In this document: piece after piece, positions 5,429 through 44,952 of the stretch
How the letters are laid out: each line of letters begins with the position of its first letter
Numbering within the stretch: the first letter of the stretch is position 1
DNA from: Saccostrea echinata
Taxonomy: Eukaryota
Reading direction: 5' to 3'
Assembly (NCBI RefSeq): GCF_033153115.1
Contig: NW_026889796.1
Span: 6,820,001-6,884,000, forward strand
DNA: 64,000 bases
Notes under the pieces: generated by a model
What the model was told of the DNA's origin: nothing
The model's input: the letters and a program-made list of their open reading frames with translations, nothing else
Databases searched by the model: none
Position numbers and translations under genes: made by a program

Positions 5429-5583
5429 NNNNNNNNNNNNNNNNNNNNNNNNNNNNNNNNNNNNNNNNNNNNNNNNNNNNNNNNNNNNNNNNNNNNNNNN
5501 NNNNNNNNNNNNNNNNNNNNNNNNNNNNNNNNNNNNNNNNNNNNNNNNNNNNNNNNNNNNNNNNNNNNNNNNNNNNNNNNNNN
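5429..5583. other. Assembly gap (run of N)
   Basis: Run of N just downstream of the TNF gene 1 stop codon. Confidence 1.
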
Positions 5584-5651: not shown

Positions 5652-8600
5652 TCATTCTTGGGTGTTACAACTGTAATCACCATGCAGTAGAGCTCGTGCA
5701 GGATTGATCTGAACAACACCAAAATAAGACGCTTCCGTATTAGTATAGATAAATGTAGGGTCTCCAATTGGTCTTATCATAATGTAATCATCACATTCAA
5801 GCTTGAACATCCCCATGTGATTCACTGTGTCAAAAGGATACTCTCCAACTGTTATATCGTAATATGCTTGACCCCTGGAACAAAACAATTAATATAAGGC
5901 GGATAAATGATATAATAATCATATTAAAAAACACTTTTGTTTATGTTTTTGAACAGGACGTTGACCTAGGTGCTATACACTATATGTTATCCTATTTTAA
6001 AAACTATGTCAGACAGGTCACGGGTTTATTTACTTGTTACATAATGTTGGTAAATATACATTGTCAGGAATTACAAACCTATTATCCTGTGTTATGTAAC
6101 TTTTTATCAAGGTCTTTTCGTTTCCACCATGAACCAGAACTGTTTCAAATCCCACGGATGGTTCGTACCTGTACATCATAGCATAAAACTAACATTTAAT
6201 AAACGCAAAGTACTAGTATGTGCGCATATAGTTGTAAATAATTATGAAGCAATTTATGCTACGTTTATTAAAAACTACTAGATCTTAGATAAAATCATTC
6301 TGAGATTTATGATGCATTCTAAGTTAATGTCAGTGTTTATAAATGGATTTGTTTACATATAAAATTGATCTCTTAAGTAAAAGCATCAAATGCTTTTAAA
6401 ACACAAGAGCCAAACAGATCAAAGCTCTTTTAATATTCATTTAAAATTGAACTAGATGCCAACAGAGCAGTGCTGTAAACAAGACAGATTTGAGATGGGT
6501 AGCAATTTGTTATGAAGTGGCACTGCTTTGCAAAAAGAACACCCTACCGAAACAGAAAGCAAATATTTCCTCAAAGTCTATTTATACTTTGGGGCATAAA
6601 TCACAAGTATTTGCATCAGAACAGTTCGTTACTATAGAATTAAAGCATAGTTATCGCCATAAAAAGAAGATAAGATATCTGCTTATAAATTAATAAACCT
6701 GTCTGTGTAAAGCTTCAAATTCATTTTTAGTATTAGAAAAAAGTACACACCAAAGGTAAATTTGTGTACTTCTGTACTTATTTACTTTTATTTTCTATTT
6801 AAGCCTTTTTTCTACATATAGAATAAAAATGCAAAAATACAAGCAGTACGAAATCGTGAAACGTCCTTGAAATGAAATGATCACGATAAACGAAGACAAA
6901 TTTAACATCCATTAATCAGACAGGTATTCATTGAATCGAGCTAATATTCTTAAATCGTTTCTCTTACTACATGTATTTATAAGCTTTTTGTACGATGGAA
7001 TAAAACTTTCAAATAACACTGTGTTGCGCTTTCTTAAGTACACAGTAGAAAAGCTTGATTATACCTACTGGTTTGCTATCATTCAAGGACCTTAACATAA
7101 AAGGAATTGTCCTTAGTTTTGTAAGTTTATTGTCAGTCTAATACATTTTGAAAATATATGTATGTTAAAAAGTCTCCAAGAAAAATATCATTAATTCCGT
7201 CATGTAAATTGAGTTATATATTACATGAAGATGTTGATGCTGAAAGATTTTTTGAAAATTATGTATCACTCAAAATGATACGAATGACTAAGTGGCCCTT
7301 TTCAGTCAAGTATGTTAAATTTGTTAAATGTTCGTTTTTAGTTGTTATTTTATTGTAAGATGGCATGCAAACAAAAAATCGTATCATCTTACAGCACCCT
7401 ATTTAAGTATGCCAATCGTAGCAACCGTAGCTATATCTACCCTCGCTCTGGACCGTTGACTGCTACTTGAGCATATACTAAATATATGCCTGGACTGCGA
7501 ACTTTGATAGCTACAGGCATATTGTAGGCGTTGTCTCTGATATAGTCAAAAGTGGAGGAATATATAGACTCCGGATCACTCCATCTGAAGCAGTGTTTCC
7601 TATTGTAGCAACCCTCTACAAAAGTAAGGTTATCAGTATAGACGTTAAACCGACAACTTGATATATACTAAGTACTCAAGAGCTTCCATACCGGAAGTTA
7701 TCTCTTGACATATTAGAATGTTCAATCTTTTCATAGTGAAGTCGTTTTCTAAAATTCAAACTGTCTATAGCAAAATTGTACAGCTTTGAAAAAGAAATTC
7801 AAAATGTAGTATTATGTTTCCTACCTATGTTATTGACGGGAGATTTAAGGGTGTCCTGAGTCATGGAGGAAGACATTGTTAAGTGGACGACCTTCTTCAT
7901 TATTCCATCTTCAAGAAAATTGCTTGACTATGATTGATTTTGACTATATTTAAAATCAAATATATCTAAATGCATCTTTAATTCTTATGAATTTGACTAT
8001 TTTTAAAATTAAATTACAAATATATCTAAATACATCCTTAATTCTTATCGGAGAGAATTTCAGAAAATAAAACATTAAGGCAGAATGAAATAAGAAGAGA
8101 GGGTTACCTTCCAAGTTTCGAATCGTGGTATTCACCAACTTGTCTGAAAAAAGAGAGAATTCAGTTATATTGAGACAAACCAGCCTGTTGAAATACTGCT
8201 ATTCTAGTTTTTTTCAATTATGCTTCAATTTTCATAATATATATAAGAAATATATATAGAGAACATTTCGTACTCAATTCTCTTTTTATTTCAGATAATT
8301 CTGCCCTTACTTGATTCCTCCATCGACCTGAAATTACACAAGGAAAATTATTTCCAAAAAAAAAAAATGAATGGGAAAGAGAGAGCATTACGAAAGTACA
8401 ATAACATGGGCTATACAGAAAGTTCTGATACTAAAGCAGTTTAGTATAACTTTTGATTTTTTATTCCTTCATATTGATGTTTTACTGAAATTTTTCGTTT
8501 CCAGTACTCGAATGGGACGTAAAACAACATACAATCAATCAATCAATCGTTTCCAGTAGGATAAATGACAAATTATCAAATGTTGATGACTGTCCCTGTA

Positions 8601-9892
8601 AAAAAAAATATTCTTACAATGTCTTGTGATGTATCATTGATGAAAAATTATACATATGTATACAGTACTTCATATGTTCTATATAAAGTCTCATGTTGGA
8701 AAATATCGGAATCTTTTTCTATTTACAGGAACACATGATATGATTACCAATGCTCTTGATTGCCAAAATATGTGAATTTATAATACCAGAAAGGTAATTC
8801 GTAAACATTGGTTTATTGTAGTTGTGACTGCAACATTAGCCAAAGGCGCTAGCAAGATATTGTCCCATGATTTTTAATCGTTTAGAGGTTTAAACATGAA
8901 TTTTAAAGAGTAGCATTGTCTTTAATGATCTTCACATCTGAGATGTTTTGCAGTCGAAGATAAGCTCAAAACAGTTAAAACAATAGTTTCCCTCAGAATT
9001 TTTTTTTGGTGATCATTGCATGGAATGTTTCAAAGTCGATGTTACATGTTAGCAAGTTTAAATAAAATGGATCCGATATTACTGATATTCAGGGAAAGAT
9101 AAAGACATATTTTTGAAATGGTCACGCGCATACACTGTTTTATGACAATAAGCCCCAGAACTTTTGTATTACTTGTCGTAAATAATTACCATTTCTTTTC
9201 TCTCTTCTGTATTCAAGATTTCTCTGCAAGAAGAACACTCTTGTAAGCTGTCGATATTATTCAGTAGCAGTTAAAGAAATAACCATACATAAATCTAAGC
9301 CCTTTTAAAGGTTTGGAATCCTTTTTAAATATGAAGTCCGTTTAAAATAATGCAAACATGCTGAATATTTTTATTATGAAAAAGGTGAAGATAACGAACA
9401 GTGATCGATCTTTAAAAAAAAAAAACTACGAACGAATAGAGGCATAAATCGCGGATTGAACCCACGGAAATTCCCAAGTATAAATGAACATTTACTAGTA
9501 CCTCTGCTTGTCTTTTTTTAAAATCAAATTTGACAAAGCAATTGCCGCACACCATAATTTCATAAAACCCATATATATATATTACTTACGTTGATTTCAG
9601 ATGATTTCTTCTGTCCATATAAGATACTTTTAGGTTCAAATAAAGGCCTTTGCGCCAAATAAACTTGAGCTTCTTCATTGTTTTGCAGTCTCTGTAGGGT
9701 TTTTTCTAGTTGATTAGTTTGAATAATTAAATAAGCTACAACTACTGACAAGAAAACAACAGCAGCTCCAAGTACTTTGATGGTGGTTGGTAGGTATTTC
9801 TCATGGCTGCAATTTGCACCGTGTACAGATCTTTCCTGAATCGGCAGACACAGACACGTGCTTTCCGATTTCGGTAAACAATTGCACTCCAT
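5652..9892 (-). CDS. TNF superfamily ligand, gene 1 (type II membrane protein, about 332 aa)
   Basis: GT-AG exons 9892-9590, 9223-9190, 8327-8274, 8143-8108, 7908-7825, 7615-7441, 6168-6079, 5874-5652 sum to 999 nt in frame. TM segment VLGAAVVFLSVVVAYLII, furin motif REKR, coiled-coil stalk, and TNF-domain motifs KKVVHL, FRW, IKVRSPGIYLVYAQV, GMFKL, SYFGVVQI. Confidence 0.88.
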
Positions 9893-12205: not shown

Positions 12206-12332
12206 CAGTAAAACTTGCTTATAAGGAAGTCACTTAGACTTCGAATTTTACTTCAATTCTTTTTATCTGTATTAGGAACATAGTAAAAATGGTTTCTTGA
12301 AACCGACATTTCCTTATAACCGAGTATTACGG
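12206..12332. mobile_element. Tc1/mariner-type MITE overlapping the gene 2 stop codon
   Basis: Left TIR TA|CAGTAAAACTTGCTTATAAGGAA; reverse complement of the right end is CCGTAATACTCGGTTATAAGGAA. Confidence 0.55.
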
Positions 12333-13791
12333 ATGGTTACTGTGGTCTTCATATTCAGGATTATTTGCTGGATTTACCTGGTAAATACCAAAATATGATG
12401 TATCACTCCCGAAAGAAATCTCCGTATTCCCCATTAGTCTTACATATATCATATCATAGCAGTAGAACTTAAACGTCCCCTGAGCAAGGACCGTGTCAAC
12501 TGGAAACGGTTTACTGTTTATATTCTGGTAACGGCGTCCTCTGGTAAGGAAAATATATGTAACTTATATGCAAGAAGAGAAAACAGTATCAAAGTGTTGA
12601 GTTAAAAGGTTAATTCAATTTGTACTATTCAAAACTACAGCTTATGAAGTTAATACTACCTCTGGTCCTGTGTGGCAATGCCTTTTGACAAGGTAAATTC
12701 GCGTTGTCCTCGAACTTGGACAATCTGAAATCCTACGGTTGAATCATAACTAGTGCTATAAAAATAAATTTATTGCATAAATTCTCATAACTTCATGATT
12801 TATTCTAAATTCAATTGCTTCACCTTATTCTCCATACACGTGAACAAAATCACGGGAATTTAAGTGGTTAAAAAAAAAAAAAAATATTGGTTAGCAAATC
12901 ATTTATTTTTTACCTCAGATCTGGCCCACTGATTGCAAGTTGGGCGTATACATAATATATTCCCGGACTGGTAATTTTTATTGCCACTGGCATATTGTTC
13001 CCATCTTTAATGAAAGTGAACGAGTCTTTGAATTCTTCCAACGGATTGTCCCATCTCAAACACCCTGCGTTGCTTGAACAATTGGCTATTGACAAAATTA
13101 TAGATATGAATGTATTTTGTTGGACTTTAAAAGATATTTCAGGTCAAATTATAAAATCGAATCAGTTTTCATAATATGTCTTACCAATATTATCCACTCT
13201 AGTGTACAGTATCGTTCTGTTCATGCTATTACTCATGGCAAGATGTGCGACTTTCTTCAAAATGACAGCTACATAAAATAGACGTTAACTTTTAAAATGA
13301 AATATCCTAGTATTAAGAAAAAAGAACAGGAATCATCAATACACAGAGCAATATGTGGATAGAAAAATACCTGTTAGTCTCAAGAAAGAATAACATAGAA
13401 TTTGGCTATATAAATTGAAGAAATTTACCTTTCAAAATTTCAACTGTACAATTAAGAGCTGCATAACCGTCTTCGAGGGTTGAAACTCTATTCCTTAACC
13501 CTGAACAGAATACAATGATAATTATTATGTTTAATGTATATTTATGTCTCATCAATGGCATATTTATTTTCAAATCAAGATGTACATGAAGTACACATTT
13601 GCATAGTATTTTTACTGTTTGATTTTCAGATCTAAGGGTAATGATGTTTTGTGAATGGAAAATTCTCAGGAATTTTACTGAATATTTGCTTATAAATTAT
13701 TATTCTGGATTGTTTTCTTTTCTTAATTATTTTACATGATTATTTTCTTTTTGTATACACCATATCATTTTTTAAAAATAAATTTTCCTTA

Positions 13792-13871
<80 letters not shown>

Positions 13872-15490
13872 TATCGAGATGTGTGTTCTTGGCCATGGGA
13901 TAGAAAACACGTGTTGGATAAAATCAAATCCAACCACAAACCATAACAGATTCTTTTTATCACATGTTTTACATAGCTATCACATGTTTAACAATGTTGT
14001 TGTTAATGAATCCATCTTATTTGACCATCATTTTAACGTAAAATCATCGTGATTTCACAACGGTTGATATGAAAACGACATCTTTTGACCGATATCTACT
14101 ATATAAAGGAGTAAACATTTTCGAAAATGCTATATAATTTAAGCGTATTTTCGTGATTTTGTCATTTTGGGATATTGACGCTTAAGAGCGTCCGCGGAAT
14201 ATGGTATTGCACGAATCACCGCTTCTATACTGTAATGAGAAAAAACGCCTCACAAAGATTACGTAAACATGACATCAATATAAGAAGCATGTTTTCTCCA
14301 TTGTGACGTAATGACAGTCAAGTCTGTTCAGTAAGCACTACGTCAGATTATTCAATTTGAGTGATTATAAAATGTAACTGTAATGGACTTCATTAAACGG
14401 TCAATATGTGGTTATAAGGACAAATGTCAAGTGGTGGTAACTTCAGACACAGAAAATAATAGCGACCTCGCAAGCTCAGTGGCTATAACTTATTGAGTTT
14501 TCGGTCAATATCTCTTGACATGGGTCCTTATAACGAAATATTGATCTACACTGAAGTTTATAATTATATAATATCCCAGTAAAGATTATATGATAAAGAT
14601 GTCATGAATTCCAGTTTAGCACACTAACGACTTTATCTTTTTCTCCAGACTTAAAATTGTCTCCAGAATGATTATATAACATCAAAATGTCACTGAAATT
14701 AAATAGAAAACTGCTATTTTTATGTTAAGTAATATTTGTTTATTTAATATCATTTAAGGAAACAGAACACCAAGGACACAAGCAGGAAATAAAATCATAT
14801 CCTACTTAGATATCCTATATTACGTTTATATTCTGGCCAAGGTAGAGATTAGTATACTTGTTTTAGATGTTAAGTCCCTCTTTTAATTATTTCCTCTTTG
14901 TTATTAAATAGTTATATACTCACTTCTATTACTACGACGTTCTCTGACTAAGAATGGTAGGGGCATACTCTGAAAGTAATCACTTCTTTAATAGTATTAT
15001 TAGTTTAAATGGTTGATCATTGAACGAATATGGAGGCATGTTGTTTTATTCCATAAAAAGAATTAGATAAAATTAGAAAAAGTAAAGAAATCAGAGCATT
15101 TATTAAGTAATGAATTTTGCATTGTAAACTTTAAAATAAAAAATGCAAGATTATTTGAACACAAAATCAGTATTTCATTTGATAGGGTTGCTTTTTAGAT
15201 ATAAAATTGTATAAAATCAAAACACATAATCAAAATAATACCTTAGCTCTGTTATTTTCCGTCGAGGAATTTTTCATTTCATTAACCATTTGTGCTTTCT
15301 TTTCGCCATTCTGTGTGCATCCATTCAATTTTACTGAAACCGTATAAACTTGATATTGCAAAAAAATATTCCAAATAACAAGAATGAATACTGCAAAAGA
15401 CAGGAAGACCAAAGCCTTTTTGCAACCCACATGGCTACATGAATAAGCACACGAACAATTGGATTTTTTCTGTGAAAACATGTACTCCAT
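12327..15490 (-). CDS. TNF superfamily ligand, gene 2 (type II membrane protein, about 310 aa), paralog of gene 1
   Basis: Exons 15490-15242, 14969-14924, 13500-13429, 13268-13185, 13085-12914, 12755-12660, 12540-12327 sum to 933 nt in frame. TM ALVFLSFAVFILVIWNIFL, furin motif RERR, and TNF motifs KKVAHL, LRW, IKITSPGIYYVYAQL, SYFGIYQV. Intron phases in the TNF domain match gene 1. Confidence 0.88.
13795..13868. repeat. (AT)n microsatellite
   Basis: Perfect AT run in a gene 2 intron. Confidence 0.95.
14400..14545. repeat. Degenerate intronic inverted repeat (fold-back element)
   Basis: TCAATATGTGGTTATAAGGACAAATGTCAAG pairs imperfectly with CTTGACATGGGTCCTTATAACGAAATATTGA. Confidence 0.6.
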
Positions 15491-15500
15491 TTTTGGGTTT

Positions 15501-15510
15501 GGATTTTCCC
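15501..15510 (-). promoter_or_regulatory. kappaB/Rel-like site GGGAAAATCC upstream of the gene 2 ATG
   Basis: Same 10-mer as in gene 1, 10 nt before the ATG (9 nt in gene 1). Confidence 0.45.
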
Positions 15511-17061
15511 TTCTCAATTATTTAACATTTTTTTGGTTTCAGTCTCAAACTCTATGAGAATGTAGGGAAACGATCGCCACTATCTAAAGAGACGGAGGAC
15601 CGCCTTACTCTCCGCCCCTCTGTTCAAATGTCGTAGCTATTTATGAACTATGCAATCGCAAAACATTAACAAACAAATTAGTGAACAACATGACTTTGCA
15701 AAAATATTGACTACTAGGAAATTTCAGTTTGCAACTTGCATGATTGACAAATCATCAAATACAATAAAAAGTCAAGGACAATAGTGTGAGAAATAGAAAT
15801 TCATAGAATTAAAACTTGCAACTACAGATTGACAATGGATCTAATTATTAGATATCTGCATATTATATCATTGGCTGTTCTGTACATACATCTTAGAAGG
15901 TCATTTTTTAAAATACACCCAATCAAAGGTCATATTTGGAACTTGCATGTTCTGAGTAAAAAAAGAAATTAAAAAAGAAACGTATATGTATGGCTGTGAT
16001 GTCCGTTTTTGAGCATTATTTAAAACTATTCTTTAGAAGATTGTTTAATTAACTTCTTTCCAAAAAAATCCTTTAAGACATTAACCACTTTCCTTACATG
16101 CAATACGTATTGGAAGGCCATTATTAAAAATAAACACATTCAAAAGTCCAAAGATTTGGAACTAGCATATATTCTGTGATAATCTGTGCGAATGGCTGCA
16201 ATGTCTGTATTTGCCCATCACAACTTTTTTTCTGAAGGATGTTTATATGCATTTGTGTACAAAACAAAATACCTTTGCAACATTAACCAACTTCTTAATC
16301 TGTAAAGGTCTCAAAATGTAGGTGACCCAAAGAACCGCATGTGAACGTGGATTTAAGTGCTTTGACTCAAATGTAAACAAGAAGGATTTACAAGCAAATG
16401 TGTTTGTTAAATTGACAAGGTGTATTTTACCTTATCTGGGCAAAAAATTTATTGTATTTAAAATACAAGAATAATCAATTATTCAACAATATATGTAGCA
16501 ACATTAGTTTTACAAGAAACCACACATTTACCCCTTGTGAAGACTCTTGACAAATTGTGTAACCTTCACGGCCTAAGTCAATATTATCTCTAAATATATA
16601 GATATATACCATGGAGAAGCAAATGGCTTCATTTGTTTTATCATTTTCTTGCATCAGTTAATGAGAAATATCTTAAAAACAAATATTTATTTCCAATATA
16701 AGACATTATAACCTCACACTCAGTATGACATTACAAACATGAGTTGAGGTATCTGCTTTTAGAAGCATCTGGTCAATTTCGACTATTGTGATGTCATAAC
16801 CATTGTTGTTTAAAGTTACATAATGAGTCAAAATCATGTATTTCTTTTAAGATAACTATATCATAATGCGGAAGATTTATGAAAAATATGAGTATAGTGA
16901 AGATATGACAAACTCAACTGTACTGCAAAGCAAGAAAAGACTGCAAAATATAAGTGCCGAAAAAACAAAGGTTGTAGTTATCGTGCATATCAAGGTCACG
17001 CAACTTTTATTTTTAGCGTAACCATGTAAACAATATTGAACTAGAGCATACAAAGGTGAGA

Positions 17062-17810
17062 AATGAAATATGGAGATAATGAACAGTATTCAAGTTCAAA
17101 GTCCATTTAGACAATACAAATTGGGAGCAGAGCAAATACGGACCTCCAAAAACATAAGAGGTGGGATCAGGTGCCATGGAGGAGTGAGCACCTCCTGTAG
17201 ACCGGTCGCACCCGCCGTGTTCTCCTTGTCATGACCGGGGAAAAAAAAGGGAAAAATCCGTAGACAATTCAGTGTGTAAATAATGACCAAAAAATTAGTA
17301 TGAAAAACGTCAGTCAGCATTTGACTTAATGATAGGTTGTATTTGCTGACAAGGTCATTGTATCAACCATGAAACTTCCAAAATGATGACTTCAGACGAG
17401 ACTGTTGATATCCTTTTTTCATCAACTTGTTTGTCAAGAGCTTGCCTCGTTTTAGAAATTGTTCATTTGTAGAGCATGCTCTTTCGTATCGAATCAACTG
17501 GGAGATAAAAACCCCATATGCAGGTGATAAGGGTATATTGCTACATAAGTAAGGGAAGTCGACGATTGAAAAAAATGAAGTCATCACGTTTATCATAAAG
17601 CTTTGTTTTAAGGCTACCATTAAAGTCTTTTTCTAGTAAAATATCCAAATATATAAACAGATATGTCAGACTCTGTGGTATCTTTTAGTTCAAGGTCACT
17701 GGGATATATCGAGTCGATATATGAATGGCAGTAACTATTCTTAATTAATAATATGTCGTCGATATATCTAAATGTCGAGTTGAAGGCCACAGCAAATTGT
17801 AATAAACTTT
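17062..17810 (-). mobile_element. Penelope-like retroelement, 3' fragment
   Basis: Frameshifted RT pieces (AFNSTFRYIDDILLI, FPYLCSNIPLSPAYGVFISQLIRY, LKSSF) and the same 3' UTR as the other two copies. Confidence 0.85.
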
Positions 17811-19304
17811 TGAAATGTGGTATCAAAATTTTTGGTCTACCGACATTCAGTTTTTGATACTTGAGACCATGGTAACTTCTACAACCTTTCTACGCACACA
17901 TAAAATAAGGAGGAAGAAGTAAGCAATATTTTCGTCTTGGGCCAGGTAAAAATTATTTTTTTTTCTCCATAAAAGTAGATTTTATAGGTTCCAAAACCTG
18001 TAATTTTCTGAAACCTAATACTTTCAGGAATTGAACAAAATCATTCTTTTTTTGTCAATATTTTCCCGTTTGTGCTTCACAGTGACATTTAACAGAAGGT
18101 TGTTTCCAGTGTAAAAACATCAAGTCAGTATGCCTTTTTCTGAAGATATATCCAGTTTTGACAGGCATTTGTCGAATGTTCGGTTTTGATTAAATTCTAA
18201 AGATATTCAAATACCATATCTTGACAATATAGAAAGAATTGAATAGGAAAAAATTAGAGACGCACTTGTTTATGCCACAAGCTAAAATTTTGAACCGCAC
18301 AAAATACCCTTCATAATGAATGCAGCTGATTAGTTTTACCTAATTTTTACAGAGATAATTGGATTTCAGATGATAGTAAAATGAAATAACTCCACATGTA
18401 ATAAATTCATACTTATCACAATATCTTTAGAAAAATTTTAATTTCGTAAAGGAGAGGGTGAAATTTAGAGGATTGCTTACCATTAACAGGTTTTGGGAAC
18501 GTCAAATGGACTACAAAGAAAGATCGATTTAGAAGCAATATTCATAGAGTTGGTAAATTCGTTGTGTCCTCACCAACAAATATGATCTCAAACTAATTTG
18601 TAAAAGCTTTTTGCTTGAATAAATAAATTTTGATTTTACTAAAATTAACAAGAAATATTGTTTGAATATTCAATAATCTTAATAATCAGTTTATATCTAT
18701 CTTGTACCCAATGGAAAAATCTCCAAAAGAAATAATTTATGTTGAAACCAATAGTTTTTCTCTAAAAACTTCCATTTTTTTTAAAGATAGGTGGGCTGCA
18801 CAAAATTTTTGTTTTCCAGGATTCGATTCAGACGCGTTTCGCTTTTTCGTTAGACAAACCCGTGTTTTAATATGAGAGATATTCATGAAGGTACCGGGGA
18901 GAATTGTTCACAGAGTCTTACATCATGCAACTCATTTTCAAAGACCACAAGGAAGGGGTTAGAAAATCAGCCAGTTTTTTTTTTTAAAATTCATTCATTC
19001 AATCAACGATATAAACAATACAAATAACAAGTTAAAGACAATAATAAATATTTACAACCATTACAAACCGTACTATTTACATTGAATTACAATTTTCATA
19101 TAAACATTACAATGCTGTATTTACAAAATAAATGTGAGGTAGAATTGAAGTATTTACACTTAATAAACCTGTTGCCGACGAATTTCTCTTCCTTTTTTCT
19201 AGGACTCTCAACACTGAGATCGACTTTGACTATGCCATTTAATGAAGTTTATATGATGTTTTGACAAATGTGGAAGTGCTGGAGAATTTGTTCAACAATA
19301 TAAG

Positions 19305-22300
19305 CTAAACAGTAAAAACAGCTCCTTTTTTGTTGAAAATGCCAACTTTAATCAGTCCAAAGAAAGATGCATTCGATGTAAAGACAGCTCGAATCCCAGA
19401 TTTAGAAATATGCCTTATTTCAATTGTATCATCTTTCGCTAGTTTCACCATTCCCATGGTAAAGCAGGATGTTTTGTCTTCGTCGTGCAACATCATGTTA
19501 TTTGAATAACATGCCAAAATAGGAGACTTATCGTTTCTTATGACGTGGTAACCCTGTGTTCCATTTCCCTTTAACGTTATCTACAATAGAAAATTCAACA
19601 CCGGTTTTTAGTGCAAATAAACCTGGGGAAAAACACTCACTTTATATATATATATATATATCAATAGTTTTCAAACAAATTATTATTTAAAACTTCAATA
19701 TTAAAAGGGCTAATTTTTAAAGTTACTAATTTTTGAAACCTGATCAAACTACATGTACATGTAAGAAAGTTCAGAGGTGCATTATTTCTAACATATAGGA
19801 AGTTTTATTTACCAAAGCTTTGCCATGTGCTACTCGGAATATAGTTAATTGTTAGCATTGATAAACGTAATACAATGATTACAAGCACAATCGATCTTTT
19901 CGAAGTACCTAAGACTCACCAAATTATAATAAATTTTATGAGTATATATCTTACTGATAATACCCACCTGTGAATACAAAAGATAGAGCCCAGATTGCTT
20001 CACTTTCAGTTTTCCATTAGGAAAGTCTAGCTCAAACTGCTTTTCTCTTGCTTTTTTTGGTTGATTGAAAAACCAGTCTGCATATTTAAACTTGTGGAAT
20101 GTTCCTGAAAGATTTTCTGTAAATGAAGATCATCCTTTTAGATACCATAACGAAAAAAAAAATCATTTTATTTAAATTACTTGAAACCATTGATACTTTG
20201 AGAAATCATGAAAACATTTTTCAAAATTATAAATTTATAATGAATTATAATGCAATGGACCAAAAACAGAGGGATTTTTCTCTCAGATAATCACTCTTTG
20301 AATAAAATAGTTTGGACTTTAATTTTTGGACAGCAATGATTGAGTGATAATAGAAATCTGTAACGTTTATATATTTTATTATTTGCAACACTAGATAAAA
20401 AAAACTACTCAGCGACACAGCTATGACAGAATACTTCATATTCTCTTTTGTTTCTTTATAACTACATTTTCCATGCTTCTAAAACAATCAAACAAATATG
20501 CAGGTTCTTCCCCAGAATTATAGAGTCAAAACATAAAGAAAAGGGGCATTCTTTTAACAAAGCTAAATTTGATTAAAAGGTGTGATTTTCAAATTTAAGG
20601 CAAGTATTACCGTCGGAATGGTAACCACCTCTCCCAGATGAATGCAAAGCGGGAAGCACAACATTCTAGAAAAATAAGGGTGACAGAATTTGTCACTTCC
20701 ATTTTATTATAAGCCATTCTTAATTCCAGCTTTAATGCAAATGTACGTATAAACCCCCTGCGCAGTAGCCATGCATTGCTAAAAATGAATGTGCGTATAA
20801 GAAAATGACAACACAAGACTGGAATTACCATTAGGTCTATGTTCGTCCTCACACCCAACAACCTGCAGCCCCGTTAACTACAAAAGGAAATATGACTAGA
20901 TTTACCGTAAGCCCAGTGGTCAACTGGTTCATTGCTTATTTCTACCATGCCCTCAACCTGGATAGCTTCTACAGTCTACAATTAGAATTAACCAGATAAA
21001 GTCTCAGGCTTGCAGCCCCGAGATCTCAGATTATCCCCGTATATTAATCTATTTCTGTATGGAGTTTGATCCAAATTGTCTTTATGTGTGATCAAACATA
21101 AACATGTCGACCATAAACAAATATTAAATAGTAAAAATATTAATCATTCTGATTCTAATTCAACTAAAAGTTAATGATTTTTACCTGTTCCAACTCACGT
21201 ATATGCACGTGAAATATGAAAACATCTTATAAATGCTAAATGATAAGAGTAAAAACGTAGATAAATAAAAATTGAATAAATAAAATGTATATAAATGAAA
21301 TATAAAGGTGGAAAATGCATAGGTATATTTTTTACCCAGATAAAAATTAAAAATATATAGAAATATATGATAGAACCTTTCCATTTTTCATCAATGTATT
21401 AAAACACTTAATATCGTCTCAAATATTCTTAAAGGAGCTTTAAATATAAAGGTTTCACGAACAAGACGTGTTAACTTGTAAAAGATTCCCTGATTTTGAC
21501 CAAAGCAAAAAAGACCTGCCGTGAATGGCATATTAACATTAACATATTTTTCAGTAATTGACCCTTTCCGTTGTCACAGTAAGAAATCATAAATTTCATA
21601 CATAATTTTCAAATAATAAGTTTCTTATTAAAGAGCTACACACTCTATGTTCTTTTTATATTCTTTAAAACGAAAATAATAATAATATCAGCATTGTATA
21701 GATTTGTTAAGTGATCCAAAGTCGTTTAGTCTGAAATTTTATTTTCTGCAAAATCTATTTTGGGTTATATAAAACACGAAAAGCTCAGTTACAAATCTCT
21801 TTCTCGTTAATATAAAAATATAAACTAAATGACTTTTACACAGAAGATTTGCACTAAAAACTTTGAAAAAAGACCAAGACATGACGACCTCACCCACTAA
21901 TAACAGGTAAGATGATATTAATAAATTAGTAATGGGCCATGCCCGTGTTAAAGATACAAGGCCATTTAACCGCTCTTTTACAATGACGAGGCAGAAAAAC
22001 ATTAAAAATAGGGAAATCTGTTATTGTTTGCTTTTATCCAATCATTTATTTGCAGAGTAACAGTTCTAAATTAGTATGTGATATGGTGGTATGCATTCGC
22101 CTCATACGTTATGTGCACTTTTATTTTGAAACCCGTGATTCAATATATATATACATGTATACAGCAAAACTTGTCTAATCCGGGCACCACTGGTTCCAAA
22201 GAAATTGGCCGGATTAATTAGACAACAGTCCGGATTAGACAACATTTTATACAAAGGATATTAATGAAAAGATTTTAAAGTTTACATCGTATTAGGCAAG

Positions 22301-25300
22301 ATTTTAGATTATACAGCATTATACGAGATTGGACAAGTTTCACTGTATACTGTACATGAACTTGGATTCATAGCCTCCAAAATCGACCAATAGTATTTGT
22401 GATTACAAAGCATGTTTCTTAGTTGCCATGAAATTACATTTGAAATAGAAAAAGACCCTTAAGATATCATACGTGCAATTTATTATACACACAGTCAAAA
22501 AACCAATTAAATCTCGCTGAAACAATCATAAACATAACTGAATCACACATTGACATTCATAGGTTGGTGCTTTTTTTGCATATTTTTTCAATGTTCCACG
22601 CAGATAACTAGAACATGTAGTTGTTTTTATCTACTTGTGGAAAATTTTAAACACTTATGTTGCCTTTTGGATACATAATTTGCGCACTGTCTACTTGAAT
22701 ATAATTTCATTGATAAGTCCGTCCCATCTTTAGTATATCTAATTCTTTTTGTCGCTTATCATCATATATGAAAATTACAATAAAAGATACACAACATAAA
22801 AATGCTTTATCTACACCCTTTAAATAATCTAAATTTACTTGAATTTATGCTGATTCTTAGAAGAAAGATGACTGAATATAATGATACATATAGATAACAT
22901 TTTTTTTTCGTGTTGAATATATAAAGCAATAGTAATAAATAAGCTATCATTATTTTTATTTAAACTGTTATTAAAACTATTGTTTTCTATCAATGTTTTA
23001 TTTACAAACTGTTCATTCTTAATAAATGAAAAGGGGAAAAATAACAAGGTGATCATTACGGTTTGAATAAAATGAAAACCATGATTGCTCAAAGTATCAT
23101 GAAAAAGTATCAATAAAATTTGTTAACAATTACAAAATGCTTATATTTACCCCTGGGAAAATCAGGATAACTTTCGCCCCCAGTCCCTTCAATATGTACA
23201 GCATCGATCTTAAAAATAACCAAAATATGTCTATTTCAAAAGTTAATTTTCAAATACATAAAAGTGCTAACAATGTATGCTAAAAATTGTTTCCATAACA
23301 AAATACATTATGGACAACAAATATACCATAATTTATTAACCTTAAATAAAAAATGTATTCTTCAATTGTGAATTTATGTTTAAAGAAGGTTTTGGTCAAA
23401 ATAATGGAGCTCCGAACAATTTAGATTTAAAACTAAAGAGCAATTTAGTTTTCATACACAATTTATACACATTTGATTTCATAGCCTCAGAATAAACATA
23501 ATTTATAGAGCTAAATGGCTAAATGCATCAATATTAATATCACCAAATAACAATGAATATGGTCACACATTGAAAAAAAAAAATCTTTCAGACAACAATT
23601 TTAAGAATATAAACTAATCTGATTACTGTGAATTTGAGAAAATCATTTTTCTTTTGCTGCTTTCTTTAAGAGAAACTTATTACCAATTCAAAATTAAAAA
23701 GAAATAATTATAATAACATGAATAGTAAATACAGCATATAAATGTCTGTAGTAAAAAGAATTCTTAGAAACCGATAAAAACTGAAAATTGAAAGACGTTA
23801 ATATAGGGGATGTGCAATTTTCTCCATTTTTGAAACATTCGTACACATTCTCAGGATTTATTCGCGAACAGTGTTTTGTTGATTTTCAAATCTAGTTAAA
23901 CTAAGTACATGTAAGTCTTAATATAAAAATTAATATTTTAAGAAAGAATTTCAAAATCTTCTTTTAATCTTCGATTTTAAAAGTCAACGTAAAACGTCAG
24001 TCCGAGACAACTCGACGTTAACTTTGAAATATATGTAGCGCAGTGTATATTACAAGATGTTTATTTAAATTTGTGACAGAGGAAAAGGGAAAACACTTCT
24101 GAAATGTAATTTCTTATACTGTTTGAGTACTGTAAACGTACTTATTTTAGTGGTAATAATATTTTAGCACTTTTGGCATTCCTTCTTTTCCGCTAATTCA
24201 TGTACACGCTAATACATGATTACAAATAATACATGTTTTAAAACTCAAGTGTGCTTATTATGATTGCGCTATTCAGATAGAGATTGTGCTAAATTCAGTG
24301 CTAATTAATGTACGTTTACAGACTGTTTTGGTGTCTAGTGTCTAGTTTTCAAAAGAAGAATTTTGCACGCCTTTATACAAAGTTATTAAAAAAACTGTGG
24401 TTCTATTCAAGATGTGACGTATTTTCTTGATTTTTTTTGAAGAAAATGTATTTAAAACTACCAAAAATGGAATTTGTAGTGAAATTGTAAATTTTATCCT
24501 TATCCTAAAACATTGAATTTCAGTGTTTCATCATTCAGAAATTTCAGAAGATTGTGTTTCTTTTTTCTCCGGATAATAAACCTTTCATAAGATACTATGT
24601 GTAATACTATATATAATTTTTGAACAAAAGAATTGTGAGACATCATTTATGAAAAATTCTGAATGCAGGAAACGCATGTTTAATTGCAACAATGAGCAGG
24701 AAAAAAAATCAAAGGAATAGCAAATCAGTTCTCAGAGTAAGCCAATTCTAGGTAATTAGAATCTCGAAATTCTTTAAATAGTTCAAAAATAAGATCTCTT
24801 CGATTTCTTTCATTTCTGGAGATTTCGTTCATGTTCTTACCTGTATTCATGAACACACATGGTAGCTATAGAGTAATTTTATGTTTGTATAATATCAATC
24901 TCATTGTTAGAACAATTTTCATCACAACAGAACGCTCATGGCAAATGAAGATATATGTTCAGGGAAAAAAAATCATGTAAATATTAAATGCAATTTAGTA
25001 AATACAAGTTTAAAATTTTTAAAATAGAGCATTTTTGCTAAAAAGACAATAAATTTCGCAAATAAGTTCATCGAGTACTTGACCCAGCCAAGAAGGCGAG
25101 ATGACATACAGCATACAATCAGATGTCCGAGTTCACTCTATAAATTTCTTCATCTATTTACATTCCGTAAAGGGTATTATAGACCCTCAGGATATGAACA
25201 GAAACAGGTCAGATTTTAAATACCCGTCTTGTTTTATACAAGTCTATTTTCAACTAGGAAGTTTATTTCCATTGGTTAGTAATTTAAACCAATTGAATCG

Positions 25301-26162
25301 TTGATATGTGTAAACATATGAAATCTGCTTGCTCTTCGATATTGTTAGATTCTATACATATTCGATACATATGAATTAGTTTTTGATCAAGATTTTAATT
25401 CAAATATTAAAACAATGCGAAAAAGATGCTTTCCCGGATTGAAAGGAGCATTATTTCGAACAATATAAAATTTTTTTTACAATAATTATTGACAATTTTA
25501 ATTCATGTTATAAGAATATAAACACGTCATTAAATTAATCTTTTTCTGCACAAGACATATTCCTGGAATTAAAACATGAAACTAGAAGTTATTTAGTTTC
25601 TGGAAATAAAACTAAATATTAAAGTCAATCCCATGCAATAAAAATAAACATGGAAGGGTTTTCTGGGAAATAAGGGATTGGGAATTATATTTATTAAGTT
25701 TCCACAATCAGTCTTTATTTACAACGTGGAGTTTGACCATTTCACTACAAGCTTGAGGATATTCTTAAGGTAAAAATCTTAACAAATTTTCATTTTAAGA
25801 AGAGCTCATACGTTTAAAAGATGATTTAATGAAACTGATTTGTTAAGGAGAATGGCATTTCTTTATTTACATATATCGGCTGATGTAAGAATACAAGAAA
25901 AATATTTCTAGATACTTGAGCAATCATGTTTACCGTGATAAATGATAAATTTATCTTCATCACATGTTGTGTTGTATGAATTAATTGGTTGGTAATTTCT
26001 CCTTACCTTTCGCTTGCAGCACGATTTGTGCCTGTGTTTATTTGGCTTAGTTTTCTTTCTTTTATCTGCATTTCGTTTTTGTCGGCTTTCAAACAACATT
26101 CCTTTGAGGGTGAAAATATGGTTTACTTCATTCTTCAAACTTGCAGGCTGAAAAAAATATGC

Positions 26163-26222
<60 letters not shown>

Positions 26223-37366: not shown

Positions 37367-40300
37367 CTAAGAAAGAAGAACTGCCCCAAAGAAAGTTTTG
37401 TCTGGGCTTATTGTAACAGCCGTGTCGCTTGTAATCACTTTTATTTGAACTGTGTCCCCTTTCTTTAAATAATGTAGTCCCATCATATTGCACGTCTTCT
37501 CCTTCGCATTGAAAAAATCCGATATTTCGTTTCGTTCATATTTATCAATACTGTCTGCACAGTGAAAGATTCTTCTGTTCGAAACAAAAATTCCGAAGAA
37601 TTCTCTAGTATCCTTCGTAAATTTCTCTATCTACCAATAGAAACAAATGAACAATTTACCTCAGATCAATTCAATGTGAATGCTTGTTTTCAATGGCAGA
37701 AAAAACAAACATCAAGCAACTTAATATTTTTCATTCCTGTATTCGATAAAAGGGTTTTAAGAAGAGTATTGCCTGTTATGCCTCGTCTGAATTGCTTTGA
37801 AAATTGAATTTCACTAATTTTTAATCCCTATATGTTGCATCTAAAATTTGATCATTCTAATGGTCATCCTTCGCAAGGACCGACTTGAAACAACATGAGA
37901 ATACTTCTATATATGTGTAGCTGTGTATTTTACTAAGTTTAATGCTTGGAGAAAACCTGAATTTGCATGAGCATTAATATATTATATAAATTTTTCAAAT
38001 AAAAGAATTTAAAATAAAAATCTTTCAAAAGAATTTCGTACGTATATACTTTTTGTAAAACCATGAATGATTTGATAATTATCTTTAAAAGATATTTCCT
38101 TCATATATCCTTATATGAAATTAAGGCTCCATTCCACTTATTTCCTGAATTGAGCCAATCTGAATATAGTTCTATACATGCTATTGGAAAGCTGTCAATT
38201 AAGATAATTTTGTGTCCATTTGATATCAGATTTGATACTTCGTTATGACAAATCGGTATTCTTCTAGTCAACAATTCTTAGCATCCAATTATGTACATGG
38301 TTGAAAACAGTTAAATAATTCAATTAAGAAGAGATTTCACATGACATTTTATCTAACAAATCAAGGCACAGTCGGTCGATGGACACAAATTGATTAGTTC
38401 AAACAAGACCATAAGGAGAAAAAAATATACTAGCATACAGTTTTTTTTATGACAAACATATAACAATAATAGCATATACAATTACCTGGGCATACAAAAG
38501 ATAAAGTCCTGACTGAAGTACTTCAAATGATTCGTGTCTGTCCGTATTAAGCACCAGTATGGTGTTTTGATATTCATTTTTCATCCAGTCAGCTTCTTGA
38601 AAATATGGAATAGCTTTATATTTCTCTGTAAATATGAAATTAAACAAAATAATTTTACAAGATCCAACTCTAAATCTAGAGCTTTAATTTGCTCGTTAAC
38701 CTTTATAAATACCTTTTAAAAAATCAATCCATGTTTATTTATATATGCCCATATAAAAAAGATCCCAGAACCTTGTTACACATAATAAGTATTAACCATG
38801 GGTACATCTTTGAGTTGTGAATAATTTTTTTTATTAATTCGAAACCAAGAAAGTATTACTATATACGCCCGATACAAATGTCAATACTGCAAATGTGAAA
38901 TGTATTGAAAGTGTGTGAATAATTACCTCGACTCCAAAATGTTTTGTTTGAAGGGCAATAGAAGTCTTCTATAGTAACTACACAATCTATAATATAACAA
39001 ATGAAAAAAAAGAAAGAAATTAAATAAAAAAGGTACATGTTGCCTTAAATATTACTGAAAATAGTATATGCCAAGTTAATGGACGTCAAGCACTTCTCTA
39101 GAAGTTTCAATTATGATTTGTATAACTGCAGAGGAGATGAAATACTTGTTTCATGATTTCCGATTCAAGTAGTTAAAACTTTCAGATGCAAAATATATAA
39201 TGGGTATATAAACAAACAACTATATTTAATCCTACTTGAATTACATTCTCTCCCTTACTTCTGTCTAAGTCATCATAAATCTACATGGCATAACATCTGA
39301 TGCTATTTTCCATATGCAACATACCTACCTCTTAAACTCGGTGGACTGGTAATAAAATGGGCACCTTTTAAATTTCCCTGAAGGAAGAAATTTGATAAAC
39401 TTCAAAAAATCTTTTCTTTGGAGCATGTTTTAGTGAACATGGACTAATGATAATACAACTATTTAATACTGCTACCTATGGGTGGACTAGAAATTCTGAT
39501 AGATGGATGCTATATCGCCAAACAAACTTTAATCAGTAAATTTTATTTGTCTTCTTTGCTAAGGTGAAATCATACTTGAGAGATTAAATTTTGTCATTAC
39601 ACGAAGAAGTTAACTCCAGATCAGATTGAATTTTTAGACTGAAGCATTTTAGAAGTTACTTTTAAATTAATATCCATAATAATGTCAACAATAAATGTAT
39701 CAGAAAACTGGCAGTGCATTCAGACTGATAAAATTTTAACATGCATTTTACGAATATTTTATTCTTAAGTTGTTGCTATATTTGAACTTGCCAAAGCTTT
39801 TTTCATTTGAGATGTTTATACTAAGACTGTACTAACAAATCACATTAACTTACAGGAGGACCTTGAATGCCAGGAAATCCTGAAAGAGAATGGAACGTGA
39901 ACACTTTATATATTAGTTCTTTGGGTTAAAGTACTAGTTAATTACTTCCAGGTACTTTTCAGCATTTAATTTTATGAGTGAAAAATTCTCTAATGGGACG
40001 TTTAAATATAAACATAATCCTCAATTTTTAAAATAGAAATGTTGTAGATTTTTTCTTAATACTTTGTCAACCTGCCTTTTTCTCCTCGGGGACCAGGGGC
40101 ACCTGGTGGACATTTGCATCTTCTGCGATTTCTTCTTTTGTTTCTTCTAGGTTTCTTCTTTTGGGTTTTCTCTTAAAAAAAAAACATTAGAAACATAATC
40201 GTATGGCATACGTTCATAGCATGAGCTAGAGTATTTTAAGTTCCATAACTCTTTCAAACACTATGCTTTGACACTTTTCCTTAGTATCCTGTAACTGTTT

Positions 40301-40960
40301 CGTCAGGATTTCATTGCTTATAATTACTGATCTTCAGCTTAAATAAAATTTCTTATTACACATAGAAGTATACTTAAAAATAAAATGATAATAATAAATA
40401 AAATAAAAATCAACTCTGTAACTAAGTCGTCAATCCTTATACAACACCTACTTTTGTCGGCACTTCTTCTTAGTCTTTTCACTTCTTCTGAAACACTAAC
40501 AAATTGTTTCACAGCTACAACTGATTCTATGGAGTCCTAAAGTTAAAAAATTTCTATATTTCTATTTTTTTTAAATTTGCATCACTGATCAAACAAAGGA
40601 CTGGGATCAAAGATGACACCGTAAGAATTTTAGAAATGCAATATACAAAGAATGGTCAGCAACGATATCCTTGCAACTTAACATTTCTAGAAACAGCACT
40701 TTATTCTAAATTAATTTAATTAATTTGAAATTAAATTTCCAAGTGATTTACAATGTACTTACTTTTTCATTGTCTTTGTATGCAGGAAAAGATATAGATG
40801 CCACGATTTTGGAGAGCTCCTTTACTTCACTCTTCAAAGTTGAAATTTCGTAGGCAGACCAAAGGAAGTACAGAAATGCAACGACCAACAACACGTGCGT
40901 CGCAACGGAAGATGCAGATAAAGAAAAGTTCATGTCTACTTTCCTTTTCGGTTCAGACAT
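37367..40960 (-). CDS. TNF superfamily ligand, gene 4, ectodysplasin-like architecture (about 305 aa)
   Basis: Exons 40960-40763, 40536-40452, 40171-40076, 39879-39854, 39377-39329, 38986-38927, 38625-38486, 37630-37367 sum to 918 nt in frame, using one GC-AG intron. TM segment, furin motifs RLRR/RNKR/RNRR, collagen GAP-GPR-GEK-GFP-GIQ-GPP-GNL, and TNF motifs GAHF, ADW, VLQSGLYLLYAQI, YLKKGDTV, TFFGAVLL. Confidence 0.88.
39476..39509 (-). CDS. Gene 4 candidate duplicate strand-A exon (HPSIRISSPPI-G)
   Basis: gatatag acceptor, gtagca donor, 34 nt, phase 0 to 1. ATT TCT AGT CCA CCC matches ATT ACC AGT CCA CCG of exon 39377-39329. Confidence 0.5.
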
Positions 40961-41075
40961 TTTAAAATTGCAACAGTATTTTTAAAATTTGCAGTAAAAA
41001 GGTAACATTTCCAGGATTATTTGCTTTTGAGAGTTATTCCTTTGCACATGTTTCTGATTGCAGCAACTTCTATTT

Positions 41076-44697: not shown

Positions 44698-44733
<36 letters not shown>

Positions 44734-44874
44734 GTGAGAGTTTTTATAAACACTTATTGAAAATCAACTTGATGCAGAATAAAAAAAGAAAAAAGTACTT
44801 GGGCTTCCAGACAAAAATCTTTTCATCCCTTTGTTTTCTGAAATGCAAGAACAGAACGATTATTTTCGTTGTTC

Positions 44875-44952
<78 letters not shown>

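What the first reader, a model, noticed from the sequence alone, without database searches (positions are those of the whole stretch)
20611..24865. Array of mutually exclusive alternative exons diversifying strand A and the following loop of a TNF ligand (Dscam-like)
Seen: between constitutive exons 26147-26007 (ends phase 0) and 20104-19968 (needs phase 1, begins GA) lie at least five short AG/GT-bounded open exons. They are 24865-24841 LPCVFMNT, 23208-23151 IDAVHIEGTGGESYPDFPR, 20975-20906 TVEAIQVEGMVEISNEPVDHWAY, 20877-20829 LTGLQVVGCEDEHRPN and 20665-20611 NVVLPALHSSGRGGYHSD. All are 3n+1 nt long (25, 58, 70, 49, 55) and end in G, rebuilding the same Gly codon. Four align on a strand-A pattern (DAVHIEG / EAIQVEG / TGLQVVG / PALHSSG) followed by a loop of variable length. 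Including none or two of them shifts the frame, so normally exactly one must be used. Established: strand A (the AHL/AHV motif) opens the TNF homology domain and the AA' loop region contributes to receptor contact; in EDA-A1/A2 a small splice difference in the TNF domain switches receptor. Inference: one gene makes five or more ligands with different receptor-binding surfaces, and mixed trimers could add combinatorial diversity. I know of no described mutually exclusive exon array in a TNF ligand, but could not search the literature.
Basis: partly seen in the sequence, partly recalled or inferred. Interest (0 to 1): 0.93.

Follow-up and report, generated by a model that had tools for sequence, protein, structure and literature searches.

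The report
Oyster TNF ligand alternative-exon cluster
An oyster TNF-family signalling gene has four interchangeable versions of one small exon plus a 12-base acceptor choice; they are spliced in RNA and conserved across oysters, with a similar array in mussels, so one gene should make eight ligands differing in one edge strand and the loop after it.

Summary
The gene is an EDA/Eiger-like TNF ligand on the minus strand (27134-19305). It matches the Saccostrea echinata RefSeq protein "eiger-like" at 100%, exon by exon.

- **RNA evidence:** contigs from four runs show GT..AG joints from exon 2 to exons b, c and d, and from b, c, d and e to exon 4.
- **Extra acceptor:** exon 4 has a second acceptor 12 nt upstream that adds four residues.
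- **Relatives:** RefSeq models of four other oyster species list exactly 4 exons x 2 acceptors = 8 isoforms. Five Mytilus species have three alternative strand-A exons plus alternative acceptors.
- **Conservation:** each exon type is as conserved among oysters (65-92%) as the constant TNF-domain exons (69-75%).
- **Exon a:** 24865-24841 has no support.
- **Exclusivity:** it is not strict. b+d and d+e transcripts exist and carry premature stops. Only single inclusion keeps the frame, and c and d are 28 nt apart.
- **RNA pairing:** a 20-nt intronic complement, unique in the genome, links the intron after b to the intron before exon 4.
- **Untested:** receptor switching and mixed trimers remain inference. 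Structure models of the variable part were of low confidence.

No paper describing this was found.

The parts
26868..27134 (-). Exon 1 coding part (89 aa): short cytoplasmic tail, transmembrane segment, start of the stalk; donor GTAAGT
   Evidence: ORF and donor read. tblastn of the S. cucullata isoforms gives 74% identity. Helix 23-57 in the orthologue's model.
26007..26147 (-). Constitutive exon 2 (47 aa, ends in phase 0): RQKR furin-type site, then a basic stretch with CC
   Evidence: 100% match to P0035 residues 1-31. Donor used in joints to b, c and d.
25110..25246 (-). Non-coding exon x: donor at 25110 joined to exon b in one run; stops in all three frames; acceptor not defined
   Evidence: Joint 23208|25110 and a contig ending at 25110 in X5. 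Translation.
23151..23208 (-). Alternative exon b (58 nt, 19 aa + G): His-type strand A (AVHIEG) plus an 11-residue loop part; the most conserved version
   Evidence: Joints E2->b (X1, X5), b->E4 (X2) and b->d (X1, X3, X5). Identical peptide in S. cucullata and O. edulis. 92% mean identity among 5 oysters. Mytilus counterpart.
23080..23099 (-). Intronic arm 1, 51-70 nt after the donor of b; complementary to arm 2
   Evidence: 19 of 20 complementary. Only these two sites exist in the 923-Mb genome. Duplex -46.7 vs -28.2 +/- 3.9 kcal/mol, z -4.7. 3 of 200 shuffles give any such pair.
20906..20975 (-). Alternative exon c (70 nt, 23 aa + G): Gln-type strand A (AIQVEG) plus the longest loop part, ending DHWAY
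   Evidence: Joints E2->c (X1, X3, X5) and c->E4 at both acceptors. It is the exon in this species' only RefSeq model, P0035. 65% mean identity, length 18-24 aa among oysters.
20878..20905 (-). 28-nt spacer between c and d, too short to be removed as an intron; the branch point of d must lie in or next to the donor of c
   Evidence: Read. No c->d joint listed. No c+d isoform in any relative.
20829..20877 (-). Alternative exon d (49 nt, 16 aa + G): Gln-type strand A (GLQVVG) plus a short acidic loop part
   Evidence: Joints E2->d (X1, X3, X5) and d->E4 in all four runs. 81% mean identity. Transcript-derived proteins P0017 and P0019.
20611..20665 (-). Alternative exon e (55 nt, 18 aa + G): His-type strand A (ALHSSG) plus a Gly-rich loop part
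   Evidence: Joints e->E4 (X2, X3) and d->e (X3). Used alone in RefSeq isoforms of 5 other oysters. 74% mean identity.
20191..20210 (-). Intronic arm 2, 74-86 nt before the exon 4 acceptors; complementary to arm 1
20105..20116 (-). Optional 12 nt from an upstream acceptor of exon 4; adds ENLS in frame
   Evidence: Joints ending at 20116 as well as 20104. ENLS/ETLS forms occur in all oyster relatives, and +4 aa (DNFA) forms in Mytilus.
19968..20104 (-). Constitutive exon 4 (enters in phase 1): strands A' to C of the TNF domain, ending LYLLYSQ
   Evidence: Pfam TNF 20.8 bits on profile positions 12-36. 100% match to P0035.
19305..19580 (-). Last exon (91 aa + TAG): strands D to H of the TNF domain
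   Evidence: Pfam TNF 14.9 bits on profile positions 64-127. 100% match to P0035. Acceptor and stop read.

Best explanation
This is a real, conserved cluster of four alternative exons (b, c, d, e) in an EDA/Eiger-like, type II membrane TNF ligand gene of an oyster. A tandem acceptor 12 nt upstream in the next exon doubles the output.

Shown:
- Exon 2 splices to b, c or d, and each of b, c, d and e splices to exon 4.
- Each exon is 3n+1 nt long, so only single inclusion keeps the TNF-domain frame.
- b+d stops nine codons into d. d+e stops five codons into exon 4.
- c and d are 28 nt apart.
- Relatives carry the same 4 x 2 = 8 isoforms.
- Each exon type is conserved as well as the constant domain.

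Inferred:
- The exons arose by tandem duplication.
- c and d exclude each other sterically.
- Two-exon transcripts are degraded by nonsense-mediated decay.
- A 20-nt intronic pairing brings the donor of b to exon 4 and loops out c-d-e.
- The isoforms keep a common strand-A core that packs against the neighbouring protomer. They differ in a surface loop of 7 to 18 residues that tunes binding to the expanded TNF receptor set.
For: - Splice joints at the predicted borders, with GT..AG ends, in four runs from two studies.
- The locus is single-copy in the genome.
- 100% exon-by-exon match to RefSeq P0035.
- Isoforms X1-X8 of S. cucullata and O. edulis, X8-X15 of C. virginica and X1-X7 of C. gigas use one exon each, with or without the extra four residues.
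- Five Mytilus species have three alternative exons plus alternative acceptors.
- Identity among oysters is b 92, d 81, e 74 and c 65%, against 69 and 75% for the constant exons and 45% for the N-terminus. Identity between exon types is 15-33%.
- The MAFFT register shows the shared core and an invariant Gly.
- TNF membership: Pfam, PDB profile hits to EDA and Eiger at 1e-10, and Foldseek to EDA-A2 with probability 1.00.
- The homotrimer model scored 0.93 against a best control of 0.30, with pLDDT about 81 and runs agreeing in at least 95% of contacts. That mark was reached by 21 of 30 solved one-chain pairs and 0 of 23 single chains. The interface includes residues 28, 30-33, 35 and 37, of which 32, 33, 35 and 37 belong to exon c.
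- The intronic pairing is supported.
Against: - Exclusivity is leaky: b->d appears in three runs and d->e in one.
- The E2->e joint is not listed for this species.
- The joints rest on assembled 31-mer contigs with under 31 nt on one side.
- The runs are only guessed to be RNA, and their depths cannot rank isoforms.
- RefSeq isoforms are automatic models.
- AlphaFold2 models gave pLDDT below 50 over the variable region, so its fold and position are not shown.
- The trimer pass may reflect memory of solved TNF trimers.
- No orthologous DNA could be fetched, so dN/dS and conservation of the intronic arms are untested.
- No receptor data exist.
Confidence: 0.8

Rival explanations
1. The isoforms differ mainly in trimer assembly, stability, shedding or matrix binding, not in receptor choice. 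The swapped strand lies in the protomer interface and directly follows the furin site and the basic, heparin-binding-like stretch.
For: The interface of the trimer model includes residues 28, 30-33, 35 and 37; 32-37 lie in the exon and 28-31 in the basic stretch just before it. The exon follows RQKR and a Lys/Arg-rich stretch with CC.
Against: The interface-facing core is the part the four exons share. The parts that differ most are the loop residues, which the model does not place in the interface. In other TNF ligands the AA'' loop is a surface loop linked to receptor binding (PMC8781899).
Confidence: 0.25
2. Only one or two exons give a working ligand. The others act mainly as regulated unproductive splicing that lowers ligand output through premature stops.
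For: b+d and d+e transcripts with premature stops are present. In three of four runs b is joined to d, and the direct b->E4 joint is listed in only one.
Against: All four exons keep an open frame 0, type-specific motifs and 65-92% identity across four other oyster species, at or above the constant domain. Poison exons need no conserved peptide. Single-exon joints or models exist for every type.
Confidence: 0.1
3. The segments are chance open frames, and the joints are splicing noise or assembly artefacts.
For: The AG..GT, 3n+1, ends-in-G pattern is no commoner than in shuffles. This probably does apply to exon a.
Against: The same joints recur in four runs from two studies. The locus is single-copy. 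The same exons are used in transcripts and models of ten other bivalve species.
Confidence: 0.02

Closest known systems
EDA-A1 / EDA-A2 (vertebrate ectodysplasin splice variants)
   Same: EDA is the closest solved relative by sequence and fold. Both have alternative splicing inside the TNF domain. In EDA, a two-residue difference selects EDAR or XEDAR (PMC8685516). The stalk also has a furin site followed by a basic stretch.
   Different: EDA uses one alternative donor after strand C, giving two forms. Here, whole alternative exons replace strand A and the loop after it, and there is also an alternative acceptor, giving eight forms. This gene has no collagen domain, though a neighbouring paralogue has short GXY exons.
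Frame-enforced and sterically enforced mutually exclusive exon clusters (alpha-tropomyosin exons 2/3; human clusters in PMC5740500)
   Same: The exons are adjacent, share a phase and are not divisible by three, so joint inclusion gives a premature stop. One pair lies too close to be spliced together. PMC5740500 still counts clusters with joining reads as mutually exclusive when the exon length is not 3n.
   Different: The host gene is a TNF ligand. No TNF or EDA cluster is mentioned in the main text of that survey. The tropomyosin comparison is from my own knowledge.
Dscam1 variable exon arrays
   Same: Both have alternative exons that change a binding surface in an immune-related or recognition protein, and both may use long-range intronic RNA pairing (PMC6071210, PMC12962786).
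   Different: There are four exons here, not dozens. One candidate pairing was found, not a docking site with many selectors. There is no evidence of stochastic, cell-specific choice.
Drosophila / insect Eiger
   Same: Same family branch: RefSeq names the relatives 'eiger-like', and PDB entries 6zt0 and 6i50 are among the best hits.
   Different: I know of no alternative strand-A exons in Eiger; this is from my own knowledge and was not searched.

Membership tests
TNF ligand superfamily (TNF homology domain, PF00229) | Sequence match to the TNF homology domain profile | tested here: met
   Exon 4 scores 20.8 bits and the last exon 14.9 bits on non-overlapping profile parts. Each is below the 23-bit cut-off only because the domain is split over exons. 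Full-length relatives carry PF00229. Profile hits to EDA, Eiger and APRIL at about 1e-10.
TNF ligand superfamily (TNF homology domain, PF00229) | Jelly-roll beta-sandwich fold | tested here: met
   Foldseek matches EDA-A2 1rj8 (E 6e-8, probability 1.00, TM 0.67 on the target), EDA-A1 and Eiger. The core of the model has pLDDT 60-85; strand A is not confidently modelled.
TNF ligand superfamily (TNF homology domain, PF00229) | Type II membrane topology with a stalk | tested here: met
   There is an N-terminal hydrophobic segment in exon 1. The orthologue's model has helix 23-57 followed by a stalk helix. The furin-type RQKR is read.
TNF ligand superfamily (TNF homology domain, PF00229) | Homotrimer | tested here: inconclusive
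   Prediction only: 0.93 against a best control of 0.30, pLDDT about 81, at least 95% of contacts shared between runs. The mark was reached by 21 of 30 solved one-chain pairs and 0 of 23 single chains. It may be memory of solved TNF trimers.
TNF ligand superfamily (TNF homology domain, PF00229) | Binds a TNF receptor | not testable with these tools
   No receptor was identified or modelled.
Mutually exclusive exon cluster | Neighbouring exons at one position with the same entry and exit phase | tested here: met
   b, c, d and e all run from phase 0 to phase 1, end in G, and lie in one intron.
Mutually exclusive exon cluster | Exons are homologous versions of the same protein segment | tested here: met
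   They share the core [A/G][V/I/L][H/Q]xxG in register. Overall identity is low at 15-33%, so homology rests on motif, phase and position.
Mutually exclusive exon cluster | Each exon joined to both flanking constitutive exons | tested here: inconclusive
   Met for b, c and d in this species. For e only the downstream joint is listed here; E2->e is present in the isoform models of five relatives.
Mutually exclusive exon cluster | Never included together, or joint inclusion breaks the frame | tested here: met
   Strict exclusion is not met, because b->d and d->e joints exist. The frame criterion is met: both forms carry premature stops. This is the rule used in PMC5740500.
Dscam-like hypervariable array | Tens of variants per cluster | tested here: not met
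   Four exons here and three in Mytilus. No other candidate in the intron has support.
Dscam-like hypervariable array | Docking site competing for many selector sequences | tested here: inconclusive
   One significant pairing was found, between the intron after b and the intron before exon 4. Nine other pairs of intron segments were at shuffle level.

The most novel reading that the evidence does not exclude
Bivalves have kept, since before oysters and mussels split, a splicing device that turns one TNF ligand gene into a family of ligands. If the eight protomers mix freely in trimers, up to 64 kinds of inter-protomer groove would face an expanded receptor set. That would be a combinatorial cytokine code in an animal without adaptive immunity, with exon choice set partly by a long-range RNA bridge.
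Probability: 0.15. Interest if true: 0.9.

Novelty: new variant of a known kind. Interest (0 to 1): 0.68.

Why it matters
TNF ligands are thought to diversify by gene duplication, and bivalves are the textbook case of such expansion. This locus shows a second route inside one gene: swapping the first strand and the adjoining surface loop by alternative exons. The device is conserved across oysters, and a similar array occurs in mussels.

It gives a small, defined set of eight natural variants of one ligand. These can be expressed and tested against the animal's receptors, so the role of this loop in receptor choice becomes directly testable.

It is also a compact model of how exon choice is enforced, combining reading frame, a 28-nt spacer and a candidate RNA bridge. 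For annotation, this species' RefSeq record has only one truncated isoform of the gene.

Tried and rejected
- **Chance test of the bare pattern:** not significant. The case therefore rests on RNA and conservation.
- **Exon a:** rejected. It has no joint, no orthologue and no motif.
- **Other open AG..GT segments in the intron** (for example 24504-24462, 22017-21894, 20818-20755): no support.
- **AlphaFold2 models:** the e-type (P0026, mean pLDDT 51.5) and the c-type (P0035, 60.8) both had the variable region below 50. The test 'can each isoform complete the fold' is therefore inconclusive.
- **Orthologous DNA:** I could not compute dN/dS, measure the spacer in other species or check conservation of the intronic arms.
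- **Other intron duplexes:** nine other pairs of intron segments were at shuffle level.
- **Signal peptide from the +1 frame of b:** I considered that the +1 frame of b, with its conserved ATG, might give a signal peptide in two-exon transcripts. I rejected this by eye: the segment has charged residues and is not hydrophobic in the relatives. The C. virginica X1-X6 models that use it start in a shifted upstream frame, which carries stops in this window.
- **Strand-A-like exons elsewhere:** a motif scan of the whole window found them only in this gene.
- **Literature:** searches for gene symbols and for TNF plus oyster plus splicing or mutually exclusive exons found no description. Subscription journals are not covered.
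- **Joined model:** I did not build or search a joined spliced model from the window. Exons were searched by reference, and full-length proteins were taken from the databases by id.
Full report
**What is in the sequence.**
The window is AT-rich animal DNA. It carries five TNF-ligand-like genes in tandem on the minus strand.

The gene in question runs from 27134 to 19305:
- exon 1 coding part, 27134-26868;
- exon 2, 26147-26007;
- the alternative region;
- exon 4, 20104-19968;
- the last exon, 19580-19305.

A RefSeq protein, P0035 (XP_061194101.1, "protein eiger-like", Saccostrea echinata, 195 aa), matches exon 2, exon c, the long form of exon 4 and the last exon at 100%. The window is therefore from that oyster or an identical sequence. 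This species' annotation holds only that one N-terminally truncated isoform.

**Check of the observation.**
All five claimed segments have the stated borders, lengths (25, 58, 70, 49, 55 nt), frame and final G.

The bare pattern is not evidence. The intron holds 18 open AG..GT segments of length 3n+1 ending in G, against 16.5 +/- 5.9 in shuffles.

**RNA.**
The runs found with the locus are labelled only as possible RNA. Laid on 20055-26050, they give joints with GT..AG ends exactly at the predicted borders:
- E2->b, E2->c and E2->d;
- b->E4, c->E4, d->E4 and e->E4.

Exon 4 is entered at 20104 or at 20116. The extra 12 nt are in frame and add ENLS.

Two-exon joints also occur: b->d in three runs and d->e in one. 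From the frames, b+d stops at a TGA nine codons into d, and d+e stops five codons into exon 4.

One run joins a donor at 25110 to b. That upstream piece has stops in all frames.

Limits of this evidence:
- These are 31-mer contigs with 26-30 nt on the shorter side of each joint.
- Five joints were not shown.
- No joint for exon a or for E2->e is listed.
- Contig depth cannot rank isoforms.

The c-d-e cluster is single-copy in the 923-Mb genome, so the contigs are not from a paralogue.

**Relatives.**
A search with the last exon, followed by searches with full-length database proteins, found the orthologue in Crassostrea virginica, C. gigas, C. angulata, Saccostrea cucullata and Ostrea edulis.

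Reading cluster members shows the same design in each species: four exon types, each with or without the four extra residues.
- S. cucullata and O. edulis list exactly these eight forms as X1-X8.
- C. virginica lists them as X8-X15.
- Transcript-derived proteins from public RNA assemblies also carry single exons (P0017, P0019, P0022).
- C. virginica X1-X6 and P0058 are two-exon forms modelled from a shifted upstream frame. In this window that frame has stops, so here such transcripts are unproductive.

Five Mytilus species have an orthologue with three alternative exons, two His-type and one Gln-type, plus acceptors adding 4 or 6 residues. Oyster exon b and one mussel exon share nearly the whole VHIEGTGGE.YP stretch. 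Orthology of the other exon types between the two lineages is unresolved.

**Conservation.**
Mean pairwise identity among the five oysters:

| Segment | Identity |
|---|---|
| exon b | 92% |
| exon d | 81% |
| exon e | 74% |
| exon c | 65% |
| exon 4 (constant) | 69% |
| last exon (constant) | 75% |
| N-terminal part | 45% |
| between exon types, within a species | 15-33% |

Each version therefore keeps its own sequence as tightly as the constant TNF domain does. That argues against poison exons or noise. The exons align on [A/G][V/I/L][H/Q]xxG, with an invariant Gly. The remainder is 7 to 14 residues, or up to 18 with ENLS.

**What the protein is.**
- Pfam TNF matches exon 4 and the last exon on separate parts of the profile.
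- A profile of the family hits EDA-A1/A2, Eiger and APRIL structures at about 1e-10.
- The model's core superposes on EDA-A2, EDA-A1 and Eiger.
- The protein has an N-terminal membrane segment, a helical stalk, an RQKR site and a basic stretch with two Cys directly before the alternative exon.

AlphaFold2 gave low confidence for the variable part in both isoforms tried, so its fold is not shown.

A three-copy model of residues 28-195 of P0035 scored 0.93 against a best control of 0.30, with pLDDT about 81 and runs agreeing in at least 95% of contacts. That mark was reached by 21 of 30 solved one-chain pairs and 0 of 23 single chains, and the pass may be memory of solved TNF trimers. Its interface lists residues 28, 30-33, 35 and 37. 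Residues 32, 33, 35 and 37 are exon c positions on alternate sides of strand A; 28, 30 and 31 are the last residues of the basic stretch of exon 2. It does not list the loop residues 41-58.

**How choice is enforced.**
Shown:
- The reading-frame rule.
- The 28-nt c-d spacer.

Inferred:
- The branch point for d must lie in or beside the donor of c, so the two sites cannot be used together. This is the classical tropomyosin-type mechanism, cited from my own knowledge.
- Two-exon forms are removed by nonsense-mediated decay.

New here: a 20-nt arm lies 51-70 nt after the donor of b, and its complement lies 74-86 nt before the exon 4 acceptors. They match at 19 of 20 positions.
- The two sites are the only ones in the genome.
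- The duplex is far stronger than shuffles, z -4.7.
- Only 3 of 200 shuffled introns contain any such pair.

Pairing would loop out c-d-e and favour b->E4.

**Comparison and novelty.**
By the working definition in PMC5740500, clusters with joining reads but non-3n exons count as mutually exclusive. The nearest functional precedent is EDA-A1/A2, where a two-residue splice difference in the TNF domain switches receptor (PMC8685516). In RANKL, the AA'' loop is a surface loop linked to receptor binding (PMC8781899).

I found no paper describing alternative strand-A exons in a TNF ligand. The isoforms are, however, already present as automatic models in RefSeq for relatives.

Earlier notes of this scan list many other candidate mutually exclusive exon pairs in this genome, so the splicing mode itself is not rare here.

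**Method note.** Exons were searched by reference, and full-length sequences were taken from the databases by id.

Noticed in passing
window 5655-9892, 12330-15517, 19305-27134, 37370-40981, 42210-45584 (all minus strand): Five TNF-ligand-like genes lie in tandem. Pfam TNF gives weak to clear hits on their last exons. The C. gigas fused model P0028 suggests the same neighbour order there.
   Followed up: partly
window 39329-39377 and 39476-39509 (minus): The paralogue at 37370-40981 has two candidate strand-A exons of 49 and 34 nt. Both are 3n+1, end in G and share an SPP motif. There was no RNA or orthologue check.
   Followed up: partly
window 40072-40171 and 39854-39879 (minus): The same paralogue has a basic furin-like stretch followed by short collagen-like GXY exons, an EDA-like layout that the gene studied here lacks.
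   Followed up: partly
window 25110-25246 (minus): An extra non-coding exon piece has its donor joined to exon b in one run. It has stops in all frames. It may be an alternative first exon or a poison exon.
   Followed up: partly
window 26166-26219 (minus): A (CT)n run of about 27 units lies directly upstream of the exon 2 acceptor. It may be a pyrimidine-tract protein binding site.
   Followed up: no
window 1958-2498 (+), 17099-17889 (-), 31686-32545 (-): Three copies of a similar open frame look like parts of one repeated mobile element. One copy lies next to a reverse-transcriptase-like frame. All of this is read by eye only.
   Followed up: no
proteins P0024, P0005, P0080-P0089 (C. virginica isoforms X1-X6): RefSeq models of two-exon transcripts start from a shifted upstream frame without a membrane segment. 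They are probably annotation artefacts of unproductive transcripts.
   Followed up: partly
window 5429-5583: A run of 155 N, either an assembly gap or masked. It was left untouched.
   Followed up: no
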